From the NCBI GenBank assembly GCA_965644295.1, contig CBFFRP010000080.1:310001-374000 (forward strand): a DNA stretch of 64,000 nt, written 5' to 3'. Both the position numbers and the translations under genes were made by a program. The notes below the pieces were generated by a model. It saw only the letters and a program-made list of their open reading frames with translations. It ran no database searches and was not told the origin of the DNA. Below are positions 20,201 to 63,800 of the stretch, one piece after another (positions within the stretch are counted from its first letter, which is position 1; every line of letters begins with the position of its first letter). This DNA is from Paraphysomonas bandaiensis. Lineage: Eukaryota; Protista; Chrysophyceae.

Positions 20201-20320
20201 TGGTAGTCTTAGATAAATGATGTCGCTGTAGCCCTGTTCCCTTGATCAGCATATGTCTATGAGCCTCCAGTAGTTTTCCCTTAGCAACATGACCGGCCCT
20301 TTCGTGCAGTAAATCGAGGG
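17214..20320 (-). CDS. pol: Copia integrase-reverse transcriptase-RNase H frame
   Basis: LLHERAGH...CKWC (HHCC zinc finger; begins upstream of the listed ATG), FVD / ADGGPE / NGVSER (integrase core), YKARLV, QLDVSNAFL, SLYGL, YVDDMLI, TDADWAG, RSKHIEIKYH. Confidence 0.95.
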
Positions 20321-21847
20321 GTCCTGCTGAACTGTATCGGACAGCATCACTTCACTGCTTCCCCCCCCCATTACATAATGGCAGGACGATATGCAAGGTA
20401 AATTTAACACATCATGCAATGCCACCCATGGCATTCCTCCATGCTCATCGTAATTTCCAACCAACACCTCTCTGCCAGTGTTCAATTCTACGATTTTTGG
20501 TACTCTCAGTAATTCGAGTCCATACCCCATAGCCCGCAGCATACCTCCAGAGACAATATTCTTCACTGCATCGTTACATACTTTGATGCCGTGCCACTGC
20601 TGAAAACTTCCCACTCCTTGGGTCTCCATCGCCGATCCCTTTTTGGTCAGTGATATTACTCCCGGCTCTTCTACATACTTCTCCAGCACTCTATCATCCT
20701 TGACGATAAACAACTGCTTTCCAGCACAACTATCCAGGTACACTCGTTCATCTCCAGTTTCAGTCAGAAGTACTTCACCATCTATCATGTTGGTCTCCTC
20801 TCCAGATGAAACGTCATCATCTACATATTTGGACCACCCCACTGATGAACTCTTCTTAACCTTCTTGGAGCCTTTTTTCTCATATTTTCTATCGATCTTC
20901 CTCTTGTTCCCTCTTTTGCACTCAGCAGCCTTGTGTTCTTTGCTACCACAATGAAAACACCCTGTATATGCTTCTGAACCCACTTGTTGCGCTCCTTTCC
21001 TCATATTCTTTGCTTTAGCCTTCCCATTTCGCTTGAACTTCTGGAAAATTTTATTTTTGTGTTTGACACGACACACACTTGCAGTATGCCCTTTTTTCAT
21101 ACAGAATGAGCATTTGACATTCTCCACACCTCCTTGTGGTCCGAGCATATTGACCTGTTCTCCTTGTTTGTCAATTTCGAACTCCTCCAGTTGTCGTTTA
21201 GCCTCATCGAATTCTTCGCACGCGTCTTTAACTATCTGATACGTGGTCGTTGCTTTAGGCAGCATTGCAATAGCTAACCACAACTCCTTCAGCTCTGGAG
21301 TATGTATGGACTTTTTGATCTTGGCGAGCTTGCTCTCCTCGGTTGGCGGCTGTCCCAACTTTGTTAACTTCTGAATTATCCCATTCAGCCTATCAATACC
21401 AATAGCGACCTTTTCATTGGCTCTAATTTTAAAGCTATGGTATTCCGCTGTAGTCTTCTCGAGTACATTTCCCAACTCCCCTCTAAACCTATCCACCAGC
21501 GTCTGAAGCATTTCATTGGACAAAACTTCCTTATTGGGATCATCATCTGGAAGTAACGCCTTCGCCTCCATGTATTGATTGGCAACCTCCAATACATCAG
21601 CGTCATGTTCACAAGCCTCCCAAATCGTTGCAACACACGTGTCATTTCGCTCATGCCATAATTCTCGTGCTCTGCCTCCTCCAGCAGGTTTCGGCTCTAA
21701 CCCCAGATGGTTCCGATTTTTCTTCATCAGATGAATCCTTATTTTTTGAGCAGACGCCTCCGCCTGATACTTGTCGAACTTCAGCACCTTGTTGTCCTCC
21801 TTCGTCTCTTCAGTGCTACCACTCGCTACCATGTTAACAATGGACAT
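20246..21847 (-). CDS. gag: Copia gag-protease frame
   Basis: Two CCHC knuckles (CSFCMKKGHTASVC, CFHCGSKEHKAAEC), protease VYLDSCA and NIVSGG. The frame shifts near 20320. Confidence 0.9.
   Translation of the reverse strand: MSIVNMVASGSTEETKEDNKVLKFDKYQAEASAQKIRIHLMKKNRNHLGLEPKPAGGGRARELWHERNDTCVATIWEACEHDADVLEVANQYMEAKALLPDDDPNKEVLSNEMLQTLVDRFRGELGNVLEKTTAEYHSFKIRANEKVAIGIDRLNGIIQKLTKLGQPPTEESKLAKIKKSIHTPELKELWLAIAMLPKATTTYQIVKDACEEFDEAKRQLEEFEIDKQGEQVNMLGPQGGVENVKCSFCMKKGHTASVCRVKHKNKIFQKFKRNGKAKAKNMRKGAQQVGSEAYTGCFHCGSKEHKAAECKRGNKRKIDRKYEKKGSKKVKKSSSVGWSKYVDDDVSSGEETNMIDGEVLLTETGDERVYLDSCAGKQLFIVKDDRVLEKYVEEPGVISLTKKGSAMETQGVGSFQQWHGIKVCNDAVKNIVSGGMLRAMGYGLELLRVPKIVELNTGREVLVGNYDEHGGMPWVALHDVLNLPCISSCHYVMGGGSSEVMLSDTVQQDPSIYCTKGPVMLLRENYWRLIDIC
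21822..21831 (-). promoter_or_regulatory. Primer binding site, probably for initiator tRNA-Met
   Basis: TGGTAGCGAG directly after the 5' LTR, similar to the Ty1 iMet PBS TGGTAGCGCC. Confidence 0.75.
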
Positions 21848-31919: not shown

Positions 31920-34238
31920 TTAAAACTCGTCATGATAGGAATCGGCGTCCAAATCCTCTTCATCCTCCTCCTCTTCCTCCTCAAGCTCGACCTCAATCTC
32001 CTCTGCAAGTTCCATCGATTCCAGATTCAAGTTACTGGCAATGGTTCGGTACATACGCTCCGCAAAGAGCTCAGTCTCGGTCTGCGCAAAGCCACTGCTG
32101 AGCAATGCCGTATCGTACAGCAGCCATGCAAGATCTTTGGTTGACTCCGCATCTGGTGCTGATTGGGCCAACGAGTTGAGCTCAATAATAATGGGGTGAC
32201 GAGGGTTCAACTCCAGCGTACGAGAAGCGGTCATCTGCTTCATGGCCTCAGGATTAGCGAAAGTCTGAGCACGCATAATGCGCTCCATATTTGCTGTGTT
32301 TCCATAGGCTCCAGTGACAATAACAGCCGGTGATGTCTCAACACGTTGAGAAACCGAAATCTTTCCGATTTTCCCGGAGAACAACTCCTTCAAATATTTG
32401 GTCAGAGGACGGAAGGTTTCCTTGTAAATCTTGGTGCGTTCCTTCACAATCTCCTCGTCCTCATCACCAAACTTGAGGCCCTCCTTGCTGAGAGACTGCA
32501 GTTTGTGGCCATCAAACTCTCCCAGATGCTGCATAGTGTACTCATCAATTGGCTCATCTAGGTACACCACTTCCACGTCCTTACGGCGTGCCTTCTCTAG
32601 GAAAGGACTCTTGGAGATAGATTCCATCGACTCTCCAGCAAGGAAGTAGATATCTGTCTGCCACTCAGGCATATTGCTAACATACTCATCCAGAGACACA
32701 AACTTGTCCTCAGATTTGCTAGTCTTATAGCGGAGTAACTTTGCTAGTTTCGATCGGTTCACACCGTCCTCAACAATACCCATTTTGATAGACTTACCAA
32801 ACTCCTTCCAGAATTTAATGTAAGGGGTGTCAGTCTCACCATCTTCAGCAGGGGCATTCGACAGCTTGCGTAGCATCTCCAAAGCCTTACGCACAAGCTT
32901 CTTGCTCATGACCTTGAGGATCTTGTGCTGCTGTAGAGTCTCACGAGAGACGTTTAGAGGGAGATCATCACTGTCAACAACACCACGAAGGAAATTGAGA
33001 TATCTTGGAAGAAGGTCCTCAAAGTCGTCCTGAATGAGCACCTTGCGGACATAAAGGCGAATACCAGCTACGCGGTTGTTGTAGTCGTCGTAAAGGTTGG
33101 AAGCAGAATCAGGGACAAATAGTATGCTCTTGAACTCGACTTCTCCCTCGGCCTTGAAGTGAATCCATGTATCGGTTTCGGTCCCATCCTTGGCGATACT
33201 GTTGTAGAAGTTGCGGTACTCATCATCGGACACCTCATCCTTATCACGGGCCCAGATGGCAACGTTGCTATTTATTCTGTGCCAATCCCACACATCAACC
33301 TTCTCAGTCCGCTTCTCGGTATCAATTTCCTCATCCTCCTCATCTTCCTCATCAACTTCGACGTCATCTTCGTCCTCGGTTTCATCCTCGTATTCTTCAT
33401 CTTCATCATCTACTTCAACAACCTCCTCCGTCTTCTTGTAAAGATGAATGGGGAAAGTGATAAACTCTGAGTACTTCTGAATCATCTCCTCGAGGCGCTC
33501 CTGCTTCAAGAACTCATGGGCATCATCCTTCAAGAACATAGTGATTTCAGTTCCACGTCCGAGGGTATTGCCACGGGGGTCCTTGGCCACAGTGAAAGAA
33601 GAATCAGCGGTGGACTCCCAGATGTGCTGATCATCGTCATTGTGCTTGGACACAACACGGACCTTGTCAGCAATCAGATACACAGAGTAGAAACCAACAC
33701 CAAATTGACCAATCAGCGACATGTCCTGCCCATCAGCCAGAGCTTCCACGAAATTAGTAGTACCGGATTTGGCGACTGTTCCAAGATTGTTCACCAGATC
33801 AGCTTTCGTCATTCCCACACCCGTATCTCTCACAGTGAGCGTCTTGAGGTCACTGTTGAACGAGATGCGAATCTCTAGATCCTTGGTGTCCCCCAACACA
33901 TCCTCAGGAGATGCAACAGAGAGGAATCTTATCTTATCAAGAGCATCTGATGCATTCGATATGAGCTCTCTTAAGAATATCTCTTTCTTCTTATAGAGAG
34001 AGTTGATGATGATATCCATCAGACGGTTCACCTCTGCCTGGAACTCAAACGTCTCCTGAGTGGTTGCTACGGCCTGTTCATGAGCCTCATCGAACCCATC
34101 CATAGCAAACTTTCTCTGAGATCCTCCAGACTCCTCTACCTCCATATCAGGCTCTTCATTGGCCAGTGCAGTGGATGTCGTGAGGACAAGCAGAGCACAT
34201 GCGGACACAAGAAATAAATGCTTAATAGAAAACTTCAT
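31920..34238 (-). CDS. HSP90B1: Endoplasmin / GRP94 (ER Hsp90), intronless
   Basis: Signal peptide [11 protein letters not shown]..., [61 protein letters not shown]-terminal HDEF. Confidence 0.97.
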
Positions 34239-34379
34239 AACGAATAAGTGCACAGAGCTAACTACTGTAGACAACAACTGATGCGGTAGCCTTCACTATG
34301 AACCAGATAATACTGTCCGTCTCTATAGGCGAATTCAAGTACTAATCTATTGACGAAGTCGAAGTGAAAAGGAGCGGCT

Positions 34380-50507: not shown

Positions 50508-51294
50508 CGCTTATATCCGTTCTTGTCGTTGTTTCAGAGATGGGGTGGACAAGCTCGTGTTATTATTGGATCTATGGGGTGTTATTCTGTAAGGAAAGCA
50601 TAGCACAGAGGAGTATAGCGACCAGCGGGGCGAGACATGTGCAGTACAGCAGTACAGTCCTGTATGTGCAGTGCACTTGAGAGTATGACTGAGCGCAGTG
50701 ATTTGGATGGTAACATGCAGGAGCGGCCGTCCACTGGAAGAATACCACGCCATGCATCACTTCCTCTTCACTTCCTCCTTCAGTGGGGTTTGGTGTATGG
50801 TATTCCTTTGTATTCACTGTATACATCGTAAAATACTATTATTATTGAATATCTGCGATATCTAGATATCTATTCATATATGTCAGGAAATATAGAAAAA
50901 TTATCGATATCTATATAAAATAACCGGAGAAATCGAACCTTCGAAGGCACATGTCAAACATACCATCTGTGCAGTTCAGCAGTATTCCTTCATATACATG
51001 CACGTATATATTCACATATATACTTCACTGCTGAGGTGTATGTGGGAGCTTCCAGTGGGCTGGATATACAGATACAGATACAGAATATATGCATGTACAG
51101 TACTGTAATAACATACACGCATCTGCTCTGTACATCAATTTCTGTCGATGTCAGACTCTGTTCGACGCATGCAGAGAGGAATATATCACTAACACACAGC
51201 TCACACCGCATGCAGGTAGTGATATAACTATTAATAGACACTGTGGGAGTATTCGAACAGCAGCAGCATGAAGAGATAGTTGTCGTCAGTCGTA

Positions 51295-54200
51295 ATGAGT
51301 AACGAAAACAAGAGCTTGCGGAAAGACGTGTCCATGCTACCAGCTCTGCCTGATTGCAGCATACCCAGAGAGCATGCGATACGAGAACTCACGGAATCTT
51401 TTGGAAATATTAATTCATCGAGCACTATAAGCCCCCGGGTTCTATGCGGCTGCACTGGGACTGGGAAGTCCACATTAGCTCTTCAGTACGCCCATGCATC
51501 CAAGGAGCAGAATAGGTATGATTTGATACGGTGGATGACAATGAGTACGGAAAATATTTTCTCGGAATGGCTGAAATTTGCAGCATCTCTTAATATTGTT
51601 TTGGAAAACACATCTCGGACACCCCTGACGGAGATTATACGTCTTGTTTTTAATCGACTGAGGCAATATCGATACCTTCTAGTTTTTGATGATGTAGATG
51701 CTTATGATAGCATTCAGTCATCCCTACCTTTTGATGTTCAGCAACAACAACATATTTTAATTACCACCGAAGTGGAAATGGAATGGCCAAGTCACGTATT
51801 TTGCATTCGCCTTGAATCCTTCACTCCCACGGAATCCATGGAGTATATACGGTGTATTTGCAAGAATTTAGACATGACACATGTGTTTTCAGAGTCAGTA
51901 GCCAATTTAATTCATGATACTATGGAGGGTCTGCCGTTAAGCCTTTCATTGACTATGCATTTCATCTCACTTCAGCACAAGACGGGGAGTGACGTGTCAT
52001 TCGAATCTTTTCTGGGCATTTACCGTACAAAGAATTTAGCAGTGAATAATATGCGTCAAACTCGGGGTAGTCAAATGCATAGTATATGTACACTTTGCGA
52101 CCTGATATTTGAGCATTTATGCAACTCTCCTCCTGCTGTTCAAGCCAGTGTCGTGGTTGCCCAATTAAGTGCATTGGGTAATGTCCCAGTACCAAGATCC
52201 TTGATTAAGAACTTGTGTCGATCCGATTCTGTGCTGGAATCAGTATTATTTTTCATTACCGATAGTGGAGTTATTAGAACGATGAATCAGGAATTTCTTT
52301 ACATGCACCCAACAGTGATGGCAGCTCTCGCTGAATGTGCTGTGTTTATTGATCGGTGGACTGTAGACATAGGGTGTTTGCCACAATTCAACAATCATAG
52401 TGTGGAGCTATTTTTAGAGCCATTGGTGGATGCTATTTGTGATATGACTTGCAGCTTCGATCGTAAAAGGTATACAGACGACGAGTATAAATTGACGTTT
52501 AGTACAGCGGTGGACGCGTACCAACACAGTGTGGTTCTGCTCTCTATATTGGACACTCTGATAAAGAGCGATACGGTAGGGTCAGCGTGCAGGCTGGTAC
52601 TGAGCAAAATGAAATGCAGACTCCAATTAAGTATCGGTTATTGTCAAGCAATACAGAAGAAATGGGAAGCTGTGTTGTGTTTATGCAACGAGTTGAAACA
52701 ATTAGTGCTAGAGTGTTATGGCGCGGAGAATATCATGTATGCCCGGTTACTGTCACTGAAAGCGAAATCATCTTCAAGGATAGAGGTAGATTCATCTGAA
52801 GCCGTAGAGTTGTATACTTCCGCGTTACAGATATTCACTGCTGTATATGGAAAACCCCATGACGATGTTGCTTATACTCTTTGTGAGTTAGGTTCTCTTC
52901 ACTTGTCTTTACATGAATACACTGAAGCCATGAGTCATTTTGAGCAAGCCATTATTATGCAGAGAAAAATGCACCGTGATGAAAGCCACCCCGTTATTGC
53001 ACACACTCTGGACTATATTGCCACAGTGAATACGTTGTTGAAAGACTATGTTGAGGGATTGTTACTATGTCGAGAGTCGCTTATGATTAAAAAACGTGTC
53101 TACAACTCATACCATCCGGAAATAGCTGCCACGATACATCAGATTGGAAGGATATACGAGCTCCAAGGTAAATATTCTGATGCATTGGCACAGTATGAGC
53201 AAGCTCTTGTTGTCAAACGGAAAGCTTATGGTGAAAATCACATATCGATTTCAACTACTCTAGAGTGCATGGCGGCTATTTACAAACGCCAGAGTAAGTT
53301 TGCGGATGCTGTTGGTGTTCTTCAAGAGAGCTTACTCATTCGAAAACATGTGTTTGGCGACAAACATATTGATATTGCACGTACTTTGTACAGCTTGGGA
53401 GACATTGCAAGGTCCCAAGGGAGATACAGCTTGGCCATGGAGATGTTTGAGGAGTCATTGCAGATGACGGTTGACTTGGTGGTAGAAGAAGATGGAGCAG
53501 AAGAAGTTGTCCGCATCCGAATAGCTATTGCGTCTGTTTACTATGCTCAAGGAAAATTTGTAGAAGCGTTAGAGCACTTTGCGCGGTGTATTGACACCCT
53601 GCGAGCTGTGTGCCCTTCTAATCACCCTGCTCTTGCCGAATGTTTAGGGTATATTGGGGGAGTATACGAAAGCCAAGGCAAGTATTCACTTGCATTAGCA
53701 CAATATGAAGAGGCACTTGGCATTGAGCGAGCCGTATATGGCTTAAACCATGTTATGGTTGCACAGACACTGACACGAATCGCTCAAGTATATAAGTTCA
53801 AGGAAAAATACGTCGAAGCGTTGACAACGTACGATGATGTTTTACAAATACGTCGAGCTATACATGGCACGAATCACGCAGAGATTGCATCCACGTTGTC
53901 CGCCATCGGTCAGATATACACCTGCCAGGGAAAGTATACGGATGGCCTGGTGTATCTAAAACAGGCCTTGGAAATGAAGAAACTCGTGTATCCTGCTGAC
54001 CATCAGTCCGTAATAGCGTCTCAAGAAACTCTTACTCGTGTTGAAAAACAGGAACGCTTTCGTGAGGTCATATTGAATAGATTCAGAACATATATCGATG
54101 CCCGACAACATGAGTCTGCGATGAGCGTTACTCTCGGAATGGCATATTCTCGAGAGGAAAAAGTAGCTGCAGCCGAATTCGTCATAAATCATATCAAGGA

Positions 54201-54378
54201 GAATGGGTTCGAGCGAATTAACACCCTTCAGACAAGTGATGAGTACAAGAAACATGAAGGCCCGCTTACAAATGGTAGGTTGGGAAAGTTGTTGTCGGAT
54301 TTGTTTGAAGAATTTTATTCCTCTCGGGACACAAGTGGGTTTGAGCGTTCTCGTACAGCTAGAGGAGCTACCACGTAA
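51295..54378 (+). CDS. NLR-like STAND protein: NB-ARC ATPase, ~12 42-aa TPRs and an unannotated C-terminal domain; intronless
   Basis: Walker A GCTGTGKS, Walker B LLVFDDV, HILITTE, GLPLSL, YMHPTV; repeats of HP..A.TL..IG..Y..QGKY..AL..YE.AL...YG..H. Confidence 0.93.
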   Translation: MSNENKSLRKDVSMLPALPDCSIPREHAIRELTESFGNINSSSTISPRVLCGCTGTGKSTLALQYAHASKEQNRYDLIRWMTMSTENIFSEWLKFAASLNIVLENTSRTPLTEIIRLVFNRLRQYRYLLVFDDVDAYDSIQSSLPFDVQQQQHILITTEVEMEWPSHVFCIRLESFTPTESMEYIRCICKNLDMTHVFSESVANLIHDTMEGLPLSLSLTMHFISLQHKTGSDVSFESFLGIYRTKNLAVNNMRQTRGSQMHSICTLCDLIFEHLCNSPPAVQASVVVAQLSALGNVPVPRSLIKNLCRSDSVLESVLFFITDSGVIRTMNQEFLYMHPTVMAALAECAVFIDRWTVDIGCLPQFNNHSVELFLEPLVDAICDMTCSFDRKRYTDDEYKLTFSTAVDAYQHSVVLLSILDTLIKSDTVGSACRLVLSKMKCRLQLSIGYCQAIQKKWEAVLCLCNELKQLVLECYGAENIMYARLLSLKAKSSSRIEVDSSEAVELYTSALQIFTAVYGKPHDDVAYTLCELGSLHLSLHEYTEAMSHFEQAIIMQRKMHRDESHPVIAHTLDYIATVNTLLKDYVEGLLLCRESLMIKKRVYNSYHPEIAATIHQIGRIYELQGKYSDALAQYEQALVVKRKAYGENHISISTTLECMAAIYKRQSKFADAVGVLQESLLIRKHVFGDKHIDIARTLYSLGDIARSQGRYSLAMEMFEESLQMTVDLVVEEDGAEEVVRIRIAIASVYYAQGKFVEALEHFARCIDTLRAVCPSNHPALAECLGYIGGVYESQGKYSLALAQYEEALGIERAVYGLNHVMVAQTLTRIAQVYKFKEKYVEALTTYDDVLQIRRAIHGTNHAEIASTLSAIGQIYTCQGKYTDGLVYLKQALEMKKLVYPADHQSVIASQETLTRVEKQERFREVILNRFRTYIDARQHESAMSVTLGMAYSREEKVAAAEFVINHIKENGFERINTLQTSDEYKKHEGPLTNGRLGKLLSDLFEEFYSSRDTSGFERSRTARGATT

Positions 54379-54649
54379 AGCATATAGACTACCAACATCA
54401 TTTCACTCAATGTTTTACCTTTATTTCGAGTTGCTGAGGAGTTGCTGATTTACGGTGTCGTCATATTTATTTATGGATTGTCGCAGAACGTTGATGACAT
54501 TTTCTGTGTTTATGAAGAGTTAGTTGTCGATTGTTTTGCTAAATTGTTACCGATAATAATATCATGCGCTTGAAATATGTACTATGTACTATATTTAGAA
54601 CTAGACCATATTATTGCCATTAATGGTACTCCAGTTCCCGGTAATTATA

Positions 54650-55354
54650 ATGGCCATTAATACACCGCTCATAATAGATAGAGTTGTCGAGTGATGCTCC
54701 CTTAATTACTAATTACTTAAATAACATTCTACGAATCGTAACAATACATCATCATTCTTTTCACTCTCCACTGGCATATCAGAATCATCATGCAGGCTTC
54801 ATGGAGAGTATTAGTATCCCACAACAATGTAATTAGAAATATAGCAACGATTCTAGACGATATGGATTCATGCTTCTACGCTCAGGTGTCATAATTAACT
54901 CTTTCTCTCAACAAAGAACCTTTTTGTGGTGTTCTGGGAGATAAGTACCGGAGATATTTCTCCGGGAAACTACCGTGAGCCGTATATATATAATCAACAG
55001 ATGATTCTCTGCTCACTCATAGCCTAATGCTTGTGTAGACGTCTTTGGGCCTTGTCGAATAAACAGGCATCCGGGAATGAATCCACCTCAAGGGCATCCG
55101 GGGTATCGGGCTGCCTACTGAAGTCAAGCATCCGGGCTGTTTAGCTTAAGAAATCAAACTTCCTGATGTCAGTAGATGTCAGGTATATCAACAATCTGCT
55201 TGCTTTGAGTGATAGAGCAAAAGTGGTTGCACCTTGGTGCTTGCGGTGATGGAGTGATGGACAACAAGCAGCTTTCGAGGCGATAAATATAGTAGGATAT
55301 TAGAGTTAAAGTTTGACTCTTAAATGTCTATTGCTAATAATAAGACATTCACTA
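54650..55354 (-). repeat. Inverted copy of ~44560-45190 (family C plus adjoining sequence)
   Basis: Long near-identical reverse-complement match that includes sequence beyond the family C end and a shared deletion of TCGGACTCGC. Confidence 0.9.
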
Positions 55355-56050
55355 CAAATCAACTCTTTGTACGACATCTGATAGAATACGCATCTATATT
55401 GCCTTGCTACTATAACTCCGATAGGCCGTCTACACACCAGTGGTTTACATACCATTCGTATTCTATACTTGGCCTTAATACTCCCCTTTCCCTAGCAAAC
55501 AAGGTCGTGACCCATATTATCATCTACCTCTCATTCCTATATCGTCATTACACAGCAAACCTCTTACTTTTGCCACTATTACTTCAGTACCGTTACTTCT
55601 CTGTATCTGTATCACTGGAATATAACCCTAGCCAGTCATTACCACCAGTCCTCACGTGTATCGATCTCAGTTTTCCCCAGCAGTTCATTCCGCTCCAAGT
55701 ACTCCCTTTGGAATATACGATACGTACTTTCGAGTGACATATTTCGCATTTGACTGTCGAATATGTGCACAAGAGCACTGCACGTCTCCGAACACTCATG
55801 CTCATTCCATCTATTGGCTGGTGGCGGTTTTCTCTCGTTCTGTCAGCCTGATGAATAAGTGCATATACGGAAACAGCTTGAATGATCTGCGATATGACTA
55901 TCTGTGACTTATGGTCATCAGGCATCATATCTTAGCTCCGACATTGCTCTAATACACCATAACAACTAACAGCACCATGGATCACAACAGATTTACACCT
56001 ATGCCACCTCTATACCTCTCGCGTGGATCTGCGCTGCAGAGTGCAGTGTC

Positions 56051-56139
56051 CTCTATCCCTGTCTGTCCCTGTCAATCCCTGTCTGTCCCTGTCTATCCCT
56101 GTCTGTCCCTGTCCGTCCCTGTCCGTCCCTGTCTGTCCT
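56051..56139. repeat. 10-bp minisatellite (CCCTGTCTGT)n, ~8-9 units
   Basis: Read directly. Confidence 0.9.
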
Positions 56140-56515
56140 GCATGTGTGTGTGTGATATCAGCAAAATATCATGTTAAAAATCCCGAAATACGTGTGCAGC
56201 ATACGAATAACCCGACTATTGGAGATATAATTCCAGGATTTTTAGGAACTCAATTCGTAACCGTTGTCTGAGGAAGACATGCAGTCATATCTATATATAG
56301 GTATACGGTGTGGTGTGGTATGGTGTGGTTAGGTACGTGGAGCACCCACACAGAGATCAGAATAGAGTCAGCGGCTCATAGAACTGTGCTGCAGTTATTC
56401 GATTCGCTGTTACAGAACAGTGCACATACACACTGTAATCAGCAACTGGAACACATATTCCGCATTCTTTCGTAGCAAAGAAGCGCCAACTCTAAATACT
56501 TATTGTATTCGCAGG

Positions 56516-57768
56516 ATGGGTGGTGCAGCAAGTATTGAATCTTCGGATGACGTTTCCAAAGAAGATTTGATCAACCAACTCCTTCCTCATTACTTAGCTA
56601 ACCCACAAAAGTATGACGATGTGTATCATATTTTAAGAGATCGAGCTAAGTTGGAACAGAAAAATAAAATGCGAAACTCATCCAATGCAGCAGTTAGCGA
56701 TATATCTGAGCCTGTACCCTTCACTGAGGATATAGTTAATGCACTGAATAATGTGAGATTAGATCCGAAATCCTTCATTCCTGTTGTTGAGGAGCACCTT
56801 CAGTCATTCGTAGATGACATGCATTATACGGATAAACATGGAAGGGAAAACATGAGGATACGAACAAGGGAGGGCAAGGCGGCAGTTGAAGAGTTAATTG
56901 AGTACTTGAAGGTAGGGCATAATAAACTTCGCCCCAACATAAATTCACGCGTGTGTACTAAAACCATGTGTATTCCTCAAACAATGCATTGCTCACATGC
57001 TGTAATGCTTACATGTTCTAATATCATCCACCAACAGACTGCTGAACCTGCCCGTGCCATTTCATCCAGTGAACTTCTCGAACAAGCTGCTATGGACCAT
57101 GTTAAAGATCTATCCGAAAACAACACTCTCAGTCATACTGGTGCTGATGGAAGTACCATCCAACTTCGAATTGAAAAGCACGCTACATGGAGGGGTATTA
57201 TTGGAGAGAATATTGACTGCGGCAACCGATCTGCGGAGAATGTTATTCTCATGTTGCTAATAGACGATGGGTGTCCAAAACGCGGGCACAGAGACAATTG
57301 TATGAACCCAGAGTTCCTGCAGGTTCGACGATTTTCGCTTGACTCTGTAGCTGACGAATGATACAACACTTCTATCTATTATTCATTGAATGTTTGCATA
57401 TATTTTATGACATTAGTTAATAATATCTCCATTAGGTAGGGGCTGCTATGGGACCGCATCAAGACTTTCAGTACTGCTGTGTGATGGATTTCGCAACATC
57501 GGTTCTGCCATGGTCTGAAGTTCAAACCTCCAATACTACTGTCACCGCAACAGCAGCGGAGTATGCTGCTGGAGAGCACTCGGAAGAATTTAAGAAAGTC
57601 CTTCGGTCGATACCAATGGACAATGTAGTATCTGAAGTGGAAAAAATGTTGGAGTCGGAAGACAGTACTGTGACCATAGAGTTCAATGCAGAGGAGTCAT
57701 CTGCTGTGATTTCATGTAAGAAAGGAAAGACAACCCGCAAGTTAAACGTCACCTGGGGAACGAAGTAA
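56516..57768 (+). CDS. CAP/SCP (PR-1 family) domain protein with an N-myristoylation motif; introns 56912-57037 and 57323-57434
   Basis: MGGAAS; LNNVRLDPKSF, TREGKAAVEELIEYL, AAMDHVKD, SHTGADGS, GENID, LLIDDG.PKRGHRDNCMNPEF, G.H......VMDFA. Confidence 0.9.
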
Positions 57769-59333
57769 TGTATCTAGTGTATATTGTGCCTTGCCAATAT
57801 TGAATGCAATCTAGTGTGTATTGCTTTATTTCCGTGATAGTTGATTCTGTTTACCAGTGGGGTTGTGATATTATGAAGCCCCATAGCTTCGTATCCACCG
57901 CTGTTATTGGCATTGTTGACTTACTTTTAATTATTTATAAGCAGAGTAGCTATTACTTATGGCTCCAATTTATTTGCCATAAAAACTAAACGTTTCTATT
58001 GTAGAGTTAGCAAGATGCACGAAGTTATAGAGTATAGAATTATATACTTTGGCTGCGTGATGCAATTTTAATCAATTTAATCGTTGCTTGAGTTCTAAAG
58101 TTCACATACTAAGTATTTGTAATACTAGACACATCAAGTTTGGAAAAAGAGGCAATATATACTCCTATGATAGTACGATTTAAAACTATCAATTAGTGTG
58201 ACATAGCACCTGATTAGTATAGAATTTGCGACACATGTATTTTGTATTTAGTATTTAGGAAGCGTACATCCTTAAATAGCACATAGATACTAAATACATC
58301 AAATTATAGAAAGGGTATAATTAGGATAACGTAACCACCAATTAGCAGAGTACTTTCTTATTGATGTGATGAATAATTTCATATGTAATGACCATCTACC
58401 TGCTACTTTGTACTTTGTAGTGATATTGATACATTTAATGTAACACAAATAGCGTACCATACTAACCGTCTCTCATAAACAAATGCAAAAATTGCAAATA
58501 ATGTAAGATGTTTTTACATGCAGTTAACAACGACTTCTACTAATCAAATAGATATTGGCTATGTCGCTATGTGCGTTATACCAACAGACGCGTTCTGTTA
58601 TATGTCTAATTCATACTTAATAATAAGTAAATAGCAATGCACCAGTCCTTTTAAGGTCTTCTTAATTACTTACACACAAACACAGAATGGAATGCCGTGT
58701 GATATGCTATCTGCGATGATCATATGCATGTTGCTTATACGCTGTGTGGAGAACGCTGCTAATAACAGCAGAGCTAATAAATAGAAAGAAATAGACAAAG
58801 GTACAAATACGACAGTGAGCTAATCGCCGTTTAGTTGCATGTGATGCTCTCGTTGCATTTCTTTATATCTAGCTCAGGATATTCAGGATAGATACGACAT
58901 CAAGATACTGTATCCGTTAAGATATCCACACACTTGCACTTTGCACACAGCACATCTGTTTTCTAGAAATTCAACTTTGATGATGAAGTTCTCGAAAATA
59001 CACATATTTCAATTTCTATAATACAAATCCTATATATTTAGAAAAAAACTCCTTAAAAAATGCCAATAATGTGACGAGCGGACGGCACGGAAGCGGGAGT
59101 TCACCGGATAGAACAGCATGAAGTACGTGTCGGTGGAATTTCAACACCATAGAATTTCTTCAATATGAAAATTTGCAGAGCGAGAAAGTCAGTTGAGGTC
59201 AGAGCACACACACATGTATGTATGTCTATGTCTAGACACAGCAGTCACATCACACCACTGAGAGGGTCAAGTCAGTCCCATTGAATGATCGAATCCATCA
59301 TTTGTATATTCCATTTCCATAATCAAGTAGCTC

Positions 59334-60404
59334 ATGTCTCAGTCTCATACGAAGCAGTTAGAGCAGAGTCTGTCGAATGCTCGTCAAGTATACGTACCCT
59401 CTGATCCGATAGTCACTAACATCATGGATCAGCTCGGCGCTGCTTATTATTCAGAGGGGAATTACACGGATGCGATGGAGAGATATAAGGAGTCACTGGA
59501 GATGAAGAGTAAGAGACAGCACGCGGACTACTCCTCTATAGCCGCATCTCTATACGACATCGCTGCTGTTAATATGGCGCAGAAACATTATATCGCTGCA
59601 TTGTTTTGGTTGAAAGAGTGCCTCAAGACTCGCTTGACATTTGTTCAAGAGGATCAGGTGGCTATTTCAGACACAATGCATGCGATGGGGCAAGTATACA
59701 TGTATGAAAACAAAGCCGAGTTGGCACTAGAAAGTTACCTTGAGGCTCTAAGTACTCGAGAATTAGTACTTCCTGCTGATGATTTGTCGAACGTCGGTTT
59801 AATTTGCAGTTTGGGGGCCGTATACTGCCAATTAAATCATTTAGATAATGCAATTGAATGCTACAAGCGTGCACGCGACATACTGTTGAAGCATGAAGGC
59901 AAGGAATGCAAACGACAGGTTGCAGAAGTATTCAAATGTATGGGGTGTGTTTTTAAACACAGAGGTGACTACAATGATGCTCTTGTACAGTATAAGGAAG
60001 CACTTGCAGTTTATAAGGAGTTGTATGGGGATTTATCCGCACCTGTGAATTCAACTGTGGCTATGATCGCCCATATTCAGCTATTGGAGAGTCACCGCCA
60101 GTCGTGTATTTTGAAAATCAAAGAATATATTGCCTCTCGCTCCAAAGAAATGAGATACGATTTTCTGTCCTTTACTAAAGAACAAAAAATTCAAGCGGCG
60201 AAGTATTTACTAGATTATGTCACGACTTGTGATGTGGGGAACGTTTGTCAAGCGATTGAGCATTCTGAAGGGTTTCTCATACACAAAGCTGCACTCTCTA
60301 ATGGACGCCTGGCGAAGATACTGAAGTCTTTATCCTTGGTTCGATCTAGTTCTCGTCAAGAGGATATAGATAACCCCCAGACACAGGTTACCATGTGCAT
60401 GTAG
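59334..60404 (+). CDS. TPR protein (~5 42-aa repeats) with the same C-terminal domain as the upstream NLR; intronless
   Basis: LGAAYYSEGNYTDAMERYKESLEMK and similar repeats; C-terminus YIASR..E...SFTKEQKIQAAKY...HKAALSNGRLAKIL. Confidence 0.9.
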   Translation: MSQSHTKQLEQSLSNARQVYVPSDPIVTNIMDQLGAAYYSEGNYTDAMERYKESLEMKSKRQHADYSSIAASLYDIAAVNMAQKHYIAALFWLKECLKTRLTFVQEDQVAISDTMHAMGQVYMYENKAELALESYLEALSTRELVLPADDLSNVGLICSLGAVYCQLNHLDNAIECYKRARDILLKHEGKECKRQVAEVFKCMGCVFKHRGDYNDALVQYKEALAVYKELYGDLSAPVNSTVAMIAHIQLLESHRQSCILKIKEYIASRSKEMRYDFLSFTKEQKIQAAKYLLDYVTTCDVGNVCQAIEHSEGFLIHKAALSNGRLAKILKSLSLVRSSSRQEDIDNPQTQVTMCM

Positions 60405-60891
60405 GGTCCGGCCGTGACCGACCTTCAAGCAAGGCAGCCGTCGATACACCTCAACATTTTTGCCATTTCAGGTGTTTTGTAGAAATATGTTCTATTGTAG
60501 TTATAATTTTCTTGTTCGTGACGTATTTTATCGCCACAATTCATTTGCCTTTTTCACATGATTGCCATATTTTGATATATTTTTGCGGAGTTTTTATTAC
60601 TGTCTTTGAGAGATAGTAATAAGTTCATTTTATCATCGTAGAAATCATGATATTATTATTTTAATTAACAATCCTACGTTCTGACGATATGGCGACTTCA
60701 GAAAAAATAATTTCGCTGTATACTTCAATTATATACACTTCCAAGAAATAAATACCATTAAAACTACACATTTCACTCATCTCTACACCAGCAGTCCACA
60801 GTAAAACATACACACTCCACAACTACACATAGACATCTCCACTATAAATGCGCTAATACCATATTACTAAATGGCACTATTTTCTATCATA

Positions 60892-63800
60892 TCATGCCTT
60901 CACCGATCCTGGCCTCATTCCTCGGCTCGGAGATCGATTGCGTGCCAATGCTGCTTTGTCAGTAGGGGCAGAACTTGACCCCTTGACGATTTTACTTTTA
61001 CTTTTCTTCTTTTTACTGGCGTGTGGGGAAGCGTCGTCAAACGCTGGTTTAGCGGGGGTTGCGGGAGTCGCTACAGGATCTTCTTTTTGTAAAGGAACGG
61101 TTGTATGAGATACGCGATTTCCTTTGCTGTGATATGTCAAAAAACAACCAGGGTTCCCCATCCATGTGCGGGAGCAGTATAAGTCTCCGCACTCGACACA
61201 TTTCTGATCCGCCTCCTCACCGCATGATACACATATATTTCTGTTGTCACTTGCGATCTCCTTCGCTAATCGCACACTACATTTCCGGACATGTATACAC
61301 TCCATGCAGGAATTGCAAAAAGGAATGGAGCAATCAGGACACGACTCCGTAGCCGGTCTGCGTTCGCATTCGTAGCATGCCATTGTACCTGGAGGCATAT
61401 CCTCCTTCATGACATCGCTTATATGCTTTCGTTTCCGGCCTTTGTTATGGAACACTTTGTAACAGGACCGACAGAAAAGTGCGTTGTTGCAATCACGGCA
61501 AGAAAGTTCAGCCGGTGAACGATCACACACTCCACACACTGGGGCTTTCGGGGCAAATCCTACCCACCTACAATACGTGAAAAGCGCACGACGAACAATG
61601 TGCTACGTATACAGAAGTATATGAACCACTCAAAAAATTAAGTACACGAATATATATATATATATAATTACATACTCTACGCACCTATGGAACGCACGCT
61701 TTCCATTTGAATGGATATCTTTATAACATCGTTCACAGTAGCATTCATCGCACTCTGCCCGAGTTCTCTCCAACATCATGCGGACCTGTTGTAGCTGTGA
61801 AGGGTTAAGAAAGACAGCATGGCCATCCTCTCCTGCTCCTGAAGCACTCAACTGATCCATCATAATCGCTAATCGACGCTCGCCACCAACATTTGCTGCT
61901 TTCAACACTTTCCCCCAGTTTTGAGAATTGGCTCGGTGGAGCTTGCTACACAAGTCGTCGATCTCTTTGTCGTCAAGTATACCCATACATTTCCTTGTTG
62001 CCGGCTCCGCACACTCACAGCAGGTCAGATACTCCACGAGTTGGTCGTCCAAATCTGAAAGAGACATGTTAGTATTCAAGCGCTGGTTAAGCCATGGAAG
62101 AGATACTAAATGCACACCAATTCCAAACAGGTCACTTTAATCATACCTTGATATTTGTGATTGATACGAGTTGGATCATTGGAATGAATCGAAGCAAAAC
62201 AAGGAAAACAATATGGCACGGGCTGTCTGCGACCTCGCTTTTGAGGACTTTTTCCAGGAGGCTGACACTCAAAACATACTCGCATCGTTTTTCGTTCTTC
62301 ACAGTTCACACAGACAGTGTTATCTCGTAAAAACGACGCAGTTGAAGCACCCACAACATTAAAAGCTGTGCCAGCAGAACCTAAATTGGAATGAAAAGCA
62401 TTATTGGGTCAAACGCCGCAGCAAGCACCACAGTAACTGTACATCGAGAACAGAAACAATGCAGTATATAGGCCACACAGAGCACTCCATATATGCACAT
62501 ACCCGCGCTCAATTGTCCCTCCTCCATGGTATCGAGATGTGGCCAAGCTTGGATCAAAGCGTCTGATCGTAGGTCACGTACTAGAGGTCGATACGGTTCC
62601 AGCGGCTCTTCGTAGGTAGACACACCAACTGCACGGTTGTAGTAGTACAGACACTTGTCCCGGTCATTCCACAGCTGTTCCCAATCGGAGTTCTGCTGGA
62701 CGCGGAGATTGGCAGCCTTTATGCGGGCTGACATGCGTCGCACAAAACTTTGCACAAGAATGCACGCCTGAATGCAAAAACAGTTTTAAAATATGCGCAC
62801 ATTGAATTGTACATATTTTCAGAACAATATGCAATCCATTCTACATATGTCGAGACCAAATTAACTAAGAAATATGCTGCTATCATACTAAATGACGGAG
62901 TTTCACCTTAAGACGAAGTGCTGAGATGCGCAAATATCGAAGCCTCTTGCCGATTCCTCTCACTCGCTTCTGGACCAAAAATGTCGCATCTTCAACTTGC
63001 TGTATGTAGGCCATCACGTCCCGACGTAGTATCAGACATGCTTTAGCTTCTGGTCCCCTAATAATTTGTACATGCGCATAAAACGTCGACATAAGTATTG
63101 AAGACACCATGCATTTCAAGTCAAAATAAAACTTACGTTATTCGTTCCCGGGGTCTCTCTGAGTTTTCATACTCGTGATCAACACCAACAATCAAATTAT
63201 CCGCTCGCTGTAAAGCATCTACCAAAACTTTGCGAATAATATTTATCTTTAGAGCGCGACATATAGCTATTAGACGACGGGTTGCGCCTTTTAAAATCAT
63301 GTATGCCTCACGTTCTTCCACATATGTACTCGTCGTCGGCTTGTCCACAATCAAATCCACGTTTTGCTGACAGCAAAGACACGTCAACAAAAATGTAATC
63401 CAACATAAACAGCACAATAAGAAATCATGAAAAAACATGCAACACAAGTAGGGTCAATTACATACAGCTTCAACGAAGTACCTGTGCAAGGGCGGGCTTT
63501 CCCGGATATCTATCTAAGAAAGAGTCAAACTGCATCTTTGTAATCGGAAAATTTGATTCCAGCATTCCAGCAGAAATATTTTGAATTCTTGAAACACTGT
63601 TGCGATAAGCTCTATTCAGCCGCTGCTTAATTGCTTGCTCAGATGCCAATATACACTCTTTAATTGTTCGGGGATCATCTGGTCCAGTGAAGTAGTTGAT
63701 CAACGTAACTGCTTGAGTTCGTTTATCCACAGGGGTATTCTTCCACCATTCTTGCAGCTTCGTAAAGTCCCTGACATCCCCATGACGGGTAATCCCAATA

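What the first reader, a model, noticed from the sequence alone, without database searches (positions are those of the whole stretch)
51295..60404. Candidate paired immune module: an effector-less NB-ARC-TPR NLR and a TPR-only partner share an unannotated C-terminal domain
Seen: both genes are intronless in an intron-rich region, lie on the same strand 5 kb apart, use 42-aa TPRs and end in an alignable ~80-aa domain. NLR (54061-54310): ILNRFRTYIDARQHE...AYSREEKVAAAEFVINHI...HEGPLTNGRLGKLLSDL. Partner (60096-60335): ILKIKEYIASRSKE...SFTKEQKIQAAKYLLDYV...HKAALSNGRLAKILKSL. The consensus is YI..R..E, [YF][ST][RK]E[EQ]K..AA.[FY], H...L[TS]NGRL.K.L. Known: fungal, plant and bacterial STAND/NLR proteins normally carry the signalling domain N-terminal to the ATPase and often work with an adjacent partner gene. 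Inference: the shared C-terminal domain is either a homotypic signalling/effector module at the opposite end from usual, or an integrated sensor/decoy, and the short gene is an adaptor or negative regulator.
Basis: partly seen in the sequence, partly recalled or inferred. Interest (0 to 1): 0.85.

Follow-up and report, generated by a model that had tools for sequence, protein, structure and literature searches.

The report
Diatom NLR-like proteins with RavZ-type tail
A marine diatom has a small family of NLR-like switch proteins and short TPR proteins that all end in a domain related to the membrane-lipid (PI3P) anchor of the Legionella effector RavZ. The two neighbouring genes are more likely family members aimed at the same membranes than a dedicated immune pair.

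Summary
Window 51295-54378 (+) encodes a 1027-aa NB-ARC + TPR protein with no N-terminal effector domain. Window 59334-60404 (+) encodes a 356-aa TPR-only protein. Both are unspliced and separately transcribed, and both end in an alignable ~85-aa helical domain.

That domain is not a generic TPR cap. It is a remote homologue of the C-terminal PI3P-binding, membrane-targeting domain of the Legionella pneumophila effector RavZ (Pfam RavZ_C):
- A profile of 42 domain copies matches RavZ at E 5e-6.
- The AF2 model of the domain matches RavZ residues 327-416 at Z 9.1-9.6, rank 1 of 48,161 chains.
- The same profile hits 86 of 151 genomes sampled from the order of a Legionella genome and 0 of 151 in the Pseudomonas-order control.

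The genome, a diatom with silicon-transporter genes, holds five copies on four contigs: three of its four NB-ARC-TPR genes and two short TPR genes. One paralogue also carries a FYVE finger.

The "pair" is weak. An expressed CAP-domain gene lies between the two genes. The short gene's paralogue and the other NLRs are unlinked. Two relatives' contigs show no second copy. The neighbours' domains are not each other's closest kin.

Best reading: a PI3P/membrane-targeting tail. Lipid binding is untested. This scan had already noted the same domain on other DNA of this genome (s1-439158).

The parts
51295..54378 (+). NLR-like gene: NB-ARC + TPR + RavZ_C-like tail, 1027 aa, single exon. The mRNA spans about 51139-54569.
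   Evidence: ORF; Pfam; RNA contigs of 3403-3431 nt ending at 54553-54569; in-frame stop at 51277.
51442..51975 (+). NB-ARC NTPase module (aa 50-227). The P-loop G52-T60 lies at 51448-51474. Walker B (LLVFDD) and GLPL are present, and MHP stands in place of MHD.
   Evidence: Pfam PF00931, E 1.1e-14, 54.8 bits; motifs read from the translation.
52792..54009 (+). TPR array of the kinesin-light-chain / TPR_10-TPR_12 type (about aa 500-905).
   Evidence: Pfam TPR_12 at 1.3e-68 and TPR_10 at 1e-57; BLASTP to the partner's TPRs.
54058..54312 (+). C-terminal RavZ_C-like helical domain of the NLR (aa 922-1006). Conserved residues: Y933, R937, R953, K956, A959, A960, G994, R995, L996.
   Evidence: Profile A2 hit at 1.5e-27; AF2 model pLDDT 88.3; RavZ 327-416 at Z 9.6 and 9.1; column conservation.
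59334..60404 (+). Short TPR + RavZ_C-like gene ('partner'), 356 aa, single exon. Its own mRNA spans about 59223-60590.
   Evidence: ORF; Pfam finds TPR only; RNA contigs of 1296-1360 nt starting at 59223-59296; full model pLDDT 90.2, pTM 0.83.
60096..60338 (+). C-terminal RavZ_C-like domain of the short protein (aa 255-335). Conserved residues: Y265, R269, K282, K285, A288, A289, G324, R325, L326. Its first helix continues straight from the last TPR helix (helix 236-270).
   Evidence: Profile A2 hit at 2e-23; invariant columns; secondary structure of the model.
56371..57916 (+). Intervening gene, not part of the family: a CAP/SCP-domain protein, spliced, with introns at 56910-57035 and 57321-57433.
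   Evidence: Pfam CAP at 1.2e-6; GT..AG joints in all four RNA runs.

Best explanation
The two genes belong to a five-gene family in a marine diatom: three NB-ARC-TPR STAND ATPases and two short TPR-only proteins. Every member ends in the same ~85-aa helical bundle.

Shown: this bundle is a remote homologue of the C-terminal domain of the Legionella effector RavZ. Published work shows that the RavZ domain binds phosphatidylinositol 3-phosphate and tethers RavZ to membranes. The same module sits at the C-termini of many different proteins in the Legionella order.

Inferred: in the diatom the tail is a phosphoinositide (probably PI3P) membrane-targeting module. It would place the TPR scaffold on endosomal, vacuolar or autophagic membranes. 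Four conserved basic positions (R937, R953, K956, R995 in the NLR) lie at the end of helix 1, the start of helix 2 and the start of the last helix. They would form the lipid-head-group site.

The RavZ module alone is reported to bind too weakly for membrane targeting. So a monomeric NLR would be mostly cytosolic, and nucleotide-driven oligomerisation after the TPRs bind a ligand would multiply the tails and clamp the complex onto PI3P membranes. One paralogue adds a FYVE finger, which fits this reading.

The short TPR proteins would occupy the same membranes. They may act as constitutive scaffolds or competitors. Their position next to one NLR is best explained as a remnant of ancient local duplication, not as an obligate two-gene module.
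For: Homology to RavZ:
- Profile A2 (42 copies) against PDB sequences: six RavZ sequences at E about 5e-6, residues 331-409.
- The eukaryote-like copies alone still rank RavZ first, but only at E 0.06.
- Foldseek's seven best matches, and rank 9, are all RavZ.
- VIA second look: Z 9.6 over 88 aa to RavZ 327-416, with the next unrelated chain at Z 5.1.
- Unbiased scan of 48,161 chains: RavZ is rank 1 and the only chain with Z of 8 or more.
- Pfam RavZ_C is the only family hit by more than one copy.

Function of the relative:
- The RavZ C-terminal domain (329-423) binds PI3P and is needed for membrane binding (PMC5388539, PMC7676224).
- Alone it does not reach PI3P-rich membranes and needs a second contact (PMC6851389).

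Behaviour as a portable localisation module:
- It is found in 86 of 151 genomes sampled from the order of a Legionella genome, often 2-5 per genome. It is found in 0 of 151 genomes of the Pseudomonas-order control.
- It is fused C-terminally to Ras-like GTPases, ankyrin repeats, an F-box-like N-terminus read from the sequence (P0027) and a LepB_N/PI-kinase-like region.

Diatom family:
- Five copies in the genome.
- Three of the four NB-ARC-TPR genes carry the domain.
- The C399 paralogue also has a FYVE finger, Pfam E 1.8e-17.
- Conserved basic columns: R20 88%, K/R36 90%, K39 98%, R/K78 64%. Three of these align with RavZ R343, K359 and K362.

Expression: both genes appear in all four RNA data sets laid, two of them culture-type runs of the same coded organism and one a marine poly(A) metatranscriptome.
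Against: - Lipid binding has been shown only for RavZ, which is a divergent member (AV for AA, SSLG for GRLG).
- The Pfam RavZ_C model itself finds nothing in this genome. No window copy reaches its cut-off.
- I could not read the paper that maps RavZ's PI3P contacts. So it is unverified that the conserved basic residues are the lipid ligands.
- The model coordinates could not be inspected. The clustering of those residues is inferred from helix boundaries alone.
- For small helical bundles a Z of about 9 is suggestive, not conclusive, on its own.
- Two of five copies lying within 5 kb in a 62.5-Mb genome is unlikely by chance (roughly 0.002 by my estimate). Some functional link between the neighbours is therefore not excluded.
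Confidence: 0.55

Rival explanations
1. A true two-gene module. The short TPR protein is an adaptor, guardee or negative regulator of the neighbouring effector-less NLR. The two meet through their shared tails or TPRs, possibly on the same membrane.
For: - Two of only five copies lie 4955 bp apart on one strand. That is about 0.002 by chance on my estimate.
- The NLR and its orthologues have no N-terminal output domain, so they need some partner.
- Both transcripts are present in all four RNA data sets.
- The short type is an old, conserved form with orthologues of 358 and 392 aa.
Against: - An unrelated expressed gene lies between them, and each has its own transcript start.
- The partner's 55%-identical paralogue on C214 has no ORF of 150 aa or more on one side and no NB-ARC among the ORFs scanned on the other, within about 10 kb.
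- The C69 and C399 NLRs have no short copy within about 10 kb.
- Contigs of the NLR orthologues P0005 (23 kb) and P0036 (12 kb) carry only one copy.
- The partner is no closer to its neighbour (23% identity) than to any other family member. Their tails are not sisters.
- The partner carries no executioner domain.
Confidence: 0.2
2. The tail is a protein-protein interaction or oligomerisation domain, homotypic or binding a host factor, and not a lipid binder. RavZ's lipid binding would then be a derived speciality.
For: - The best-conserved positions (Y16, A42, A43, G77, L79) are core-like rather than ligand-like.
- The partner model gives a rigid, continuous helix from the TPRs into the tail, with pTM 0.83.
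- Some Legionella-order proteins carry 2-4 tandem copies.
Against: - The only experimentally characterised member binds PI3P (PMC5388539, PMC6851389).
- Four basic columns are conserved at 64-98% across eukaryote-like and bacterial copies.
- Its position at the C-terminus of unrelated effector-like modules, including Ras-like GTPases, is typical of localisation domains.
- FYVE co-occurs in one paralogue.
Confidence: 0.18
3. Integrated decoy. The tail mimics a host domain that effectors of intracellular bacteria bind or copy, and the NLR monitors it.
For: The same domain is abundant in proteins of the Legionella order, an order of intracellular bacteria. The NLR lacks other obvious sensor-specific additions.
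Against: - Three of the four NB-ARC-TPR genes and two non-NLR genes carry it, so it is a family trait and not an insertion into one sensor.
- It is homologous to a part of effectors, not to a known effector target.
- I know of no evidence that such bacteria infect diatoms.
Confidence: 0.04
4. The shared piece is only a generic TPR capping or solvating helix bundle with no function of its own.
For: Its first helix is continuous with the last TPR helix.
Against: - It occurs without any TPR in many bacterial proteins.
- Its fold matches RavZ, and no TPR cap appears among the listed matches when 48,161 chains are scanned.
- The fourth NB-ARC-TPR gene of this genome (C143) ends without it.
- A diatom-only profile finds just 35 proteins among 1.84 billion, although TPR proteins are everywhere.
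Confidence: 0.03

Closest known systems
RavZ C-terminal PI3P-binding / membrane-targeting domain (Legionella pneumophila Lpg1683, residues 329-423; Pfam PF22225 RavZ_C)
   Same: - Same size and all-helical fold: Z 9.1-9.6 over 86-88 aa.
- Profile match at E 5e-6 over residues 331-409.
- Shared motif order: Y..R, then S-K..K, then L-G-K.
- C-terminal position in a modular protein.
   Different: - The diatom copies fall below the Pfam family's cut-off.
- RavZ lacks the near-invariant AA and G-R-L-G.
- The diatom copies follow TPR arrays, not a cysteine protease, and I saw no LIR motifs next to them.
- Lipid binding is untested here.
NB-ARC-TPR STAND proteins of stramenopiles (24 genes in the brown alga Ectocarpus; PMC3341825) and of bacteria and fungi
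   Same: NB-ARC NTPase followed by TPR_10/12-type repeats. These proteins are candidate intracellular receptors.
   Different: - The family here is tiny: four genes.
- The TPRs lie in one exon, with no exon shuffling.
- The window gene has no N-terminal domain, and three of the four genes carry an extra RavZ_C-like tail. In my term search of that paper, no passage returned mentions such a tail on the Ectocarpus NB-ARC-TPR proteins.
Legionella effector phosphoinositide-binding helical modules (P4M, P4C, LED006/027/035; PMC13435680, citing Nachmias 2019)
   Same: - Small C-terminal helical bundles shared by many effectors.
- Basic residues at helix junctions.
- Prevalent across the genus.
   Different: - I could not establish whether this domain equals one of the numbered LEDs, because the defining paper is not held.
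[quoted passage not shown] This one has eukaryotic relatives.
Paired NLRs (plant head-to-head sensor/helper pairs) and fungal NLR-plus-adjacent-effector gene pairs with shared amyloid motifs (PMC5485727, PMC9815663)
   Same: An NLR-like gene and a nearby gene share a short terminal module.
   Different: - The genes lie on the same strand with an unrelated gene between them.
- The partner has neither an NTPase nor an executioner domain.
- The shared module is a folded 85-aa bundle at both C-termini, not an NLR N-terminal motif matched to a partner's prion-forming motif.
- Linkage is not seen in paralogues or relatives.

Membership tests
STAND NB-ARC NTPase (NLR-like) | NB-ARC domain above the curated score | tested here: met
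   PF00931 at 54.8 bits against a cut-off of 23.5, aa 50-227.
STAND NB-ARC NTPase (NLR-like) | Walker A P-loop, Walker B, GLPL and an MHD-type histidine | tested here: met
   Read from the translation: GCTGTGKST, LLVFDD, EGLPL, and YMHP (His kept, Asp replaced by Pro).
STAND NB-ARC NTPase (NLR-like) | Sensor-1 arginine (the 'TTR' of RNBS-B) | tested here: inconclusive
   The window protein reads ITTE at that place. Relatives vary: TSR in P0004 and TTR in P0007. The motif placement rests on my own knowledge, not on a structural alignment.
Canonical tripartite NLR | N-terminal effector or signalling domain | tested here: not met
   Only 51 residues precede the P-loop. There is an in-frame stop at 51277. 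The mRNA contig starts about 155 nt upstream of the ATG. Orthologues P0004 and P0005 are equally short.
Canonical tripartite NLR | C-terminal repeat (sensor) domain | tested here: met
   TPR_12 at 1.3e-68 and TPR_10 at 1e-57.
RavZ_C (PF22225) | Match to the Pfam model above its 27-bit cut-off | tested here: not met
   Neither window copy hits the model. The best among 42 copies is E 0.008. The model finds nothing in the genome.
RavZ_C (PF22225) | Significant profile-to-sequence similarity to the RavZ C-terminal domain | tested here: met
   A2 profile: E about 5e-6, residues 331-409. With eukaryote-like copies only, RavZ is still first but at E 0.06.
RavZ_C (PF22225) | Same fold as RavZ residues 329-423 | tested here: met
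   Z 9.6 (rmsd 3.6, 88 aa) and Z 9.1; rank 1 of 48,161 chains; next unrelated chain at 5.1 and 7.3.
RavZ_C (PF22225) | Binds PI3P | not testable with these tools
   Conserved basic columns align with RavZ R343, K359 and K362. Their role in RavZ could not be checked, because Horenkamp 2015 is not held.
Paired NLR / NLR-effector gene pair | Directly adjacent genes forming one unit | tested here: not met
   A spliced CAP-domain gene lies between them, and there are three separate transcripts.
Paired NLR / NLR-effector gene pair | Linkage kept in paralogues and relatives | tested here: not met
   C214, C69 and C399 have no counterpart within about 10 kb. L111 (23 kb) and L113 (12 kb) hold one copy each. 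The relatives' contigs are short, so this test is limited.
Paired NLR / NLR-effector gene pair | Partner carries an executioner or second NTPase domain | tested here: not met
   The partner has only TPRs plus the tail.
Integrated decoy | Unusual domain present in single sensors of a family and homologous to an effector target | tested here: inconclusive
   The domain is present in 3 of 4 NB-ARC-TPR genes and in 2 non-NLR genes. Its known relatives are parts of effectors, not effector targets.

The most novel reading that the evidence does not exclude
The RavZ-type PI3P anchor is not a bacterial invention. It is a protist domain, or one exchanged between protists and their intracellular bacteria. 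In diatoms it would tether NLR-like STAND switches to PI3P-marked internal membranes, with a FYVE finger added in one paralogue. Oligomerisation would give avidity-driven recruitment. The short TPR-plus-tail proteins would be membrane-resident co-factors of that surveillance system.
Probability: 0.25. Interest if true: 0.8.

Novelty: new variant of a known kind. Interest (0 to 1): 0.58.

Why it matters
- RavZ's membrane-targeting domain is called "unique" (PMC6851389). [quoted passage not shown] Clear relatives at the ends of eukaryotic STAND/TPR proteins would give this module a eukaryotic counterpart. That opens the question of who borrowed it from whom.
- NLR-like proteins with a built-in phosphoinositide anchor, and no N-terminal executioner, would be a different way of wiring a STAND switch. 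The output would be a change of location rather than a death domain.
- The domain definition built here (alignment A2) picks out many proteins in more than half of the Legionella-order genomes sampled. It is a ready handle for annotating effector localisation domains.
- All of this rests on untested lipid binding.

Tried and rejected
With P0027 it found nothing.
- I tried to name the bacterium behind P0027 through its ATP synthase beta subunit. That gave 81-86% identity to many gammaproteobacteria and no assignment. It did yield Legionella loci that served as handles.
- The ESM Atlas search by features gave no usable hit. The search by shape gave unrelated rows.
- The Pfam RavZ_C model searched in the genome and in 14 control genomes found nothing.
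- Horenkamp 2015 and Nachmias 2019 are not held. A search for RavZ residue numbers found nothing. So the PI3P-contact residues and the LED number of this domain remain unverified.
- The weak NCBIfam Ceg19 match could not be followed up in papers.
- The domain tree of 61 rows and 95 columns left the deep nodes open, so the direction of transfer is undecided.
- Contigs of the partner's orthologues P0015 and P0023 are too short for synteny.
- Rfam found nothing between the genes.
- P0014 and P0017 are repeat proteins that match only part of the profile. I set them aside as doubtful.
- The genes downstream of the partner hold a B-box and a WW domain but no FYVE.
- The three exons of the C399 paralogue were searched apart by reference. 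The joined spliced protein was not built.

Full report
**1. What is there**

The + strand holds an ORF at 51280-54378. Its first ATG is at 51295, and an in-frame TAG lies at 51277-51279. It encodes 1027 aa. Pfam finds NB-ARC (54.8 bits, cut-off 23.5, aa 50-227) and a long TPR_10/TPR_12 array. Read from the translation, the protein has a P-loop (G52-T60), a Walker B motif, GLPL and an MHD-like His. Only 51 residues precede the P-loop.

A second ORF at 59334-60404 gives 356 aa with TPR families only. The two C-terminal ends alone align at E 5e-9. A profile places the shared domain at 54058-54312 and 60096-60338.

**2. Transcripts**

I laid 54000-59999 on contigs of four RNA or RNA-like runs. All four carry the spliced form of the middle gene, so they do derive from RNA.
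- The NLR transcript contigs are 3403-3431 nt long and end at 54553-54569. They are colinear over the part laid. Their length fits an unspliced message starting near 51140.
- The partner's contigs of 1296-1360 nt start at 59223-59296.
- Between them lies a separate spliced gene at 56371-57916, with two GT..AG introns. It encodes a CAP/SCP-domain protein.

So the two genes are 4955 bp apart on one strand, are transcribed separately, and are not adjacent. The stretch is also held by marine poly(A) metatranscriptomes.

**3. The organism**

The 62.5-Mb genome carries many silicon-transporter (PF03842) loci above the cut-off. Together with the marine RNA data, this supports the "marine diatom" label that earlier notes of this scan use.

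**4. The family in this genome**

A six-frame search with the NLR's tail finds five copies on four contigs.
- C80: the window NLR and the partner.
- C69: an NB-ARC-TPR protein with a long N-terminal extension.
- C399: an NB-ARC-TPR gene in three exons whose first exon also encodes a FYVE finger (Pfam E 1.8e-17). I searched its exons apart and did not join them.
- C214: a 357-aa TPR-only protein, 55% identical to the partner.

The NTPase module has only four relatives in the genome. The fourth, on C143 (1505 aa, NB-ARC + TPR), has no tail even at E 100. The tail is therefore a trait of a small family: three of four NLR-like genes and two short genes.

**5. What the tail is**

Pfam has no family above threshold. 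The only recurrent weak hit is RavZ_C.

A profile of the five diatom copies, run against 1.84 billion representative proteins, found only 35 proteins. They fall into three groups:
- NB-ARC-TPR and TPR-only proteins.
- Asparagine-rich TPR proteins.
- Proteins without TPRs that carry one to four copies and look bacterial. One of these has an N-terminus that reads like an F-box.

A 42-copy alignment (A2) matches RavZ of Legionella pneumophila in the PDB sequence set at E about 5e-6, residues 331-409. With the eukaryote-like copies only (A4), RavZ is still first, but at E 0.06. The link by sequence therefore runs through the bacterial intermediates.

The structural evidence agrees.
- The AF2 model of the NLR tail has pLDDT 88.3.
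- Foldseek's seven best matches, and rank 9, are all RavZ, with probability up to 0.94 but weak E-values.
- VIA gives Z 9.6 (rmsd 3.6, 88 aa) to RavZ 327-416, with the next unrelated chain at 5.1.
- In an unbiased scan of 48,161 chains, RavZ is rank 1 and the only chain with Z of 8 or more. No TPR cap appears among the listed matches.

RavZ residues 329-423 are its C-terminal domain. That domain binds PI3P and is needed for membrane binding (PMC5388539, PMC7676224). On its own it does not localise to autophagic membranes or early endosomes, probably because PI3P binding is weak. It helps targeting only together with other contacts (PMC6851389).

**6. The bacterial side**

Using a Legionella qingyii locus as a handle, the A2 profile hits 86 of 151 genomes sampled from that genome's order. 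There are often two to five hits per genome, and some large ORFs carry tandem copies. It hits 0 of 151 genomes sampled from the order of a Pseudomonas genome.

The complete ORFs I scanned carry the domain at the C-terminus of several different modules:
- Ras-like GTPases.
- Ankyrin repeats.
- A LepB_N/PI-kinase-like region.
- Proteins with no other known domain. There is also a weak match to the C-terminal half of the Ceg19 model.

One metagenomic gammaproteobacterial contig has three consecutive genes ending in it. This is how a portable localisation module behaves.

**7. Conserved residues**

Across A2 the near-invariant positions are Y16, K39, A42, A43, G77 and L79. Basic residues dominate at positions 20 (88% R), 36 (90% K/R), 39 (98% K/R) and 78 (64%). 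In the NLR these four are R937, R953, K956 and R995.

By the predicted helix boundaries they lie at the end of helix 1, the start of helix 2 and the start of the last helix. That would be one end of the bundle. I could not inspect the coordinates, so this clustering is an inference.

Three of them align with RavZ R343, K359 and K362. I could not check in a held paper whether those residues contact PI3P.

PMC13435680 reports that other Legionella four-helix lipid binders carry their validated basic residues near helix junctions at one end of the bundle.

**8. The partner as a whole**

The full model (pLDDT 90.2, pTM 0.83) shows about five and a half TPRs. A 35-residue helix (236-270) runs from the last TPR straight into the tail. 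The TPR part resembles kinesin-light-chain and LGN-type peptide-binding TPRs.

**9. Is it a pair?**

For:
- Two of five copies lie within 5 kb. I estimate this at about 0.002 by chance (10 pairs x 12 kb / 62.5 Mb).
- The NLR subfamily lacks an output domain.
- Both genes are expressed in the same four data sets.

Against:
- An unrelated gene intervenes, and the transcripts are separate.
- The C214 paralogue has no ORF of 150 aa or more on one side, and no NB-ARC among the ORFs scanned on the other, within about 10 kb.
- The C69 and C399 NLRs have no second copy within about 10 kb.
- Contigs of the NLR orthologues (23 kb and 12 kb) hold one copy each and different neighbours.
- In the domain tree the NLR's tail groups with P0004 and P0005 (97/93), not with its neighbour.
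- The partner is 23% identical to its neighbour, the same as to every other family member.

I read the proximity as an old local duplication. I keep a functional link at about 0.2.

**10. Mechanism proposed**

The mechanism is inferred except where I mark a step as shown. The tail is a PI3P or phosphoinositide anchor. This rests on shown homology to a published PI3P binder. As a weak single site, it would give strong membrane binding only when multiplied by NB-ARC oligomerisation, or when combined with a FYVE finger as in the C399 paralogue. The TPRs would bind the activating or cargo peptide. The short proteins would be constitutive residents or competitors at the same membranes.

**11. Novelty**

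NB-ARC-TPR proteins are known in stramenopiles (PMC3341825), and RavZ_C is known in Legionella. In the papers I could search, I found no description of the combination or of eukaryotic relatives of this domain.

The same scan had already noted the Legionella-like tail on the FYVE-bearing paralogue elsewhere in this genome (s1-439158).

The direction of transfer between protists and the Legionella order remains open.

Noticed in passing
window 54800-55400: Contig depth in the RNA runs rises up to about 100-fold over the flanking genes (for example 34,756 against about 300). There are many variant letters and irregular joints. It looks like a dispersed, highly transcribed repeat. Rfam finds no family there.
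   Followed up: partly
window 58645-58905: An isolated piece of about 260 nt is present in three of the four RNA runs, between the CAP-domain gene and the partner. It has silent flanks. No Rfam family matches and no ORF of note is present.
   Followed up: partly
window 56042-56141: Seven overlapping copies at 10-nt spacing (a 10-nt unit, TCTGTCCCTG-like) lie about 230 nt upstream of the 5' ends of the CAP-domain gene's transcript contigs (56371-56397).
   Followed up: no
window 17214-21847 (-): Two long ORFs of a Copia-type retrotransposon (integrase core, SH3-like domain, RVT_2).
   Followed up: no
window 31920-34274 (-): A single-exon Hsp90-family gene of 784 aa with an N-terminal extension of about 100 aa before the ATPase domain. 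This may be an organellar or ER form.
   Followed up: no
window 60892-62755 (-): Just downstream of the partner, on the other strand, lie exons with an ANCHR-like B-box (E 7.6e-13) and a weak WW domain. No FYVE finger was found.
   Followed up: partly
L012 3300-4700 (G000 C69): The C69 paralogue has an N-terminal extension of several hundred residues before its P-loop, read from the translation. By eye it shares short motifs with P0007 just upstream of the P-loop. It is a candidate output domain that the window NLR lacks. Upstream of it, a microsatellite reads through in frame as MYVC repeats.
   Followed up: no
L009 7682-8803 (-) (G000 C214): A FYVE-finger protein gene lies about 7 kb from the partner's paralogue.
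   Followed up: no
window 60390-60401 and L004 1435-1446: Both short paralogues end in Cys-Met ([M/I]-C-M). Their orthologues P0015 and P0023 do not. This is not a CaaX box, and its meaning is unknown.
   Followed up: no
L013 4557-12250: A metagenomic gammaproteobacterial contig carries three consecutive genes that all end in the RavZ_C-like domain: two ankyrin-repeat proteins and one protein with an F-box-like N-terminus and two copies.
   Followed up: partly
L105 1444-2358 and L107 1453-2532: Genomes of the Legionella order encode Ras-family GTPases whose C-terminus is the RavZ_C-like domain. I did not look for a prenylation motif in them.
   Followed up: partly
PDB 4m0m (lpg2422), residues 627-737: The C-terminal region of this Legionella protein of unknown function is the third-best structural match to the tail (Z 6.9, 17% identity). 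It may be another divergent member.
   Followed up: no
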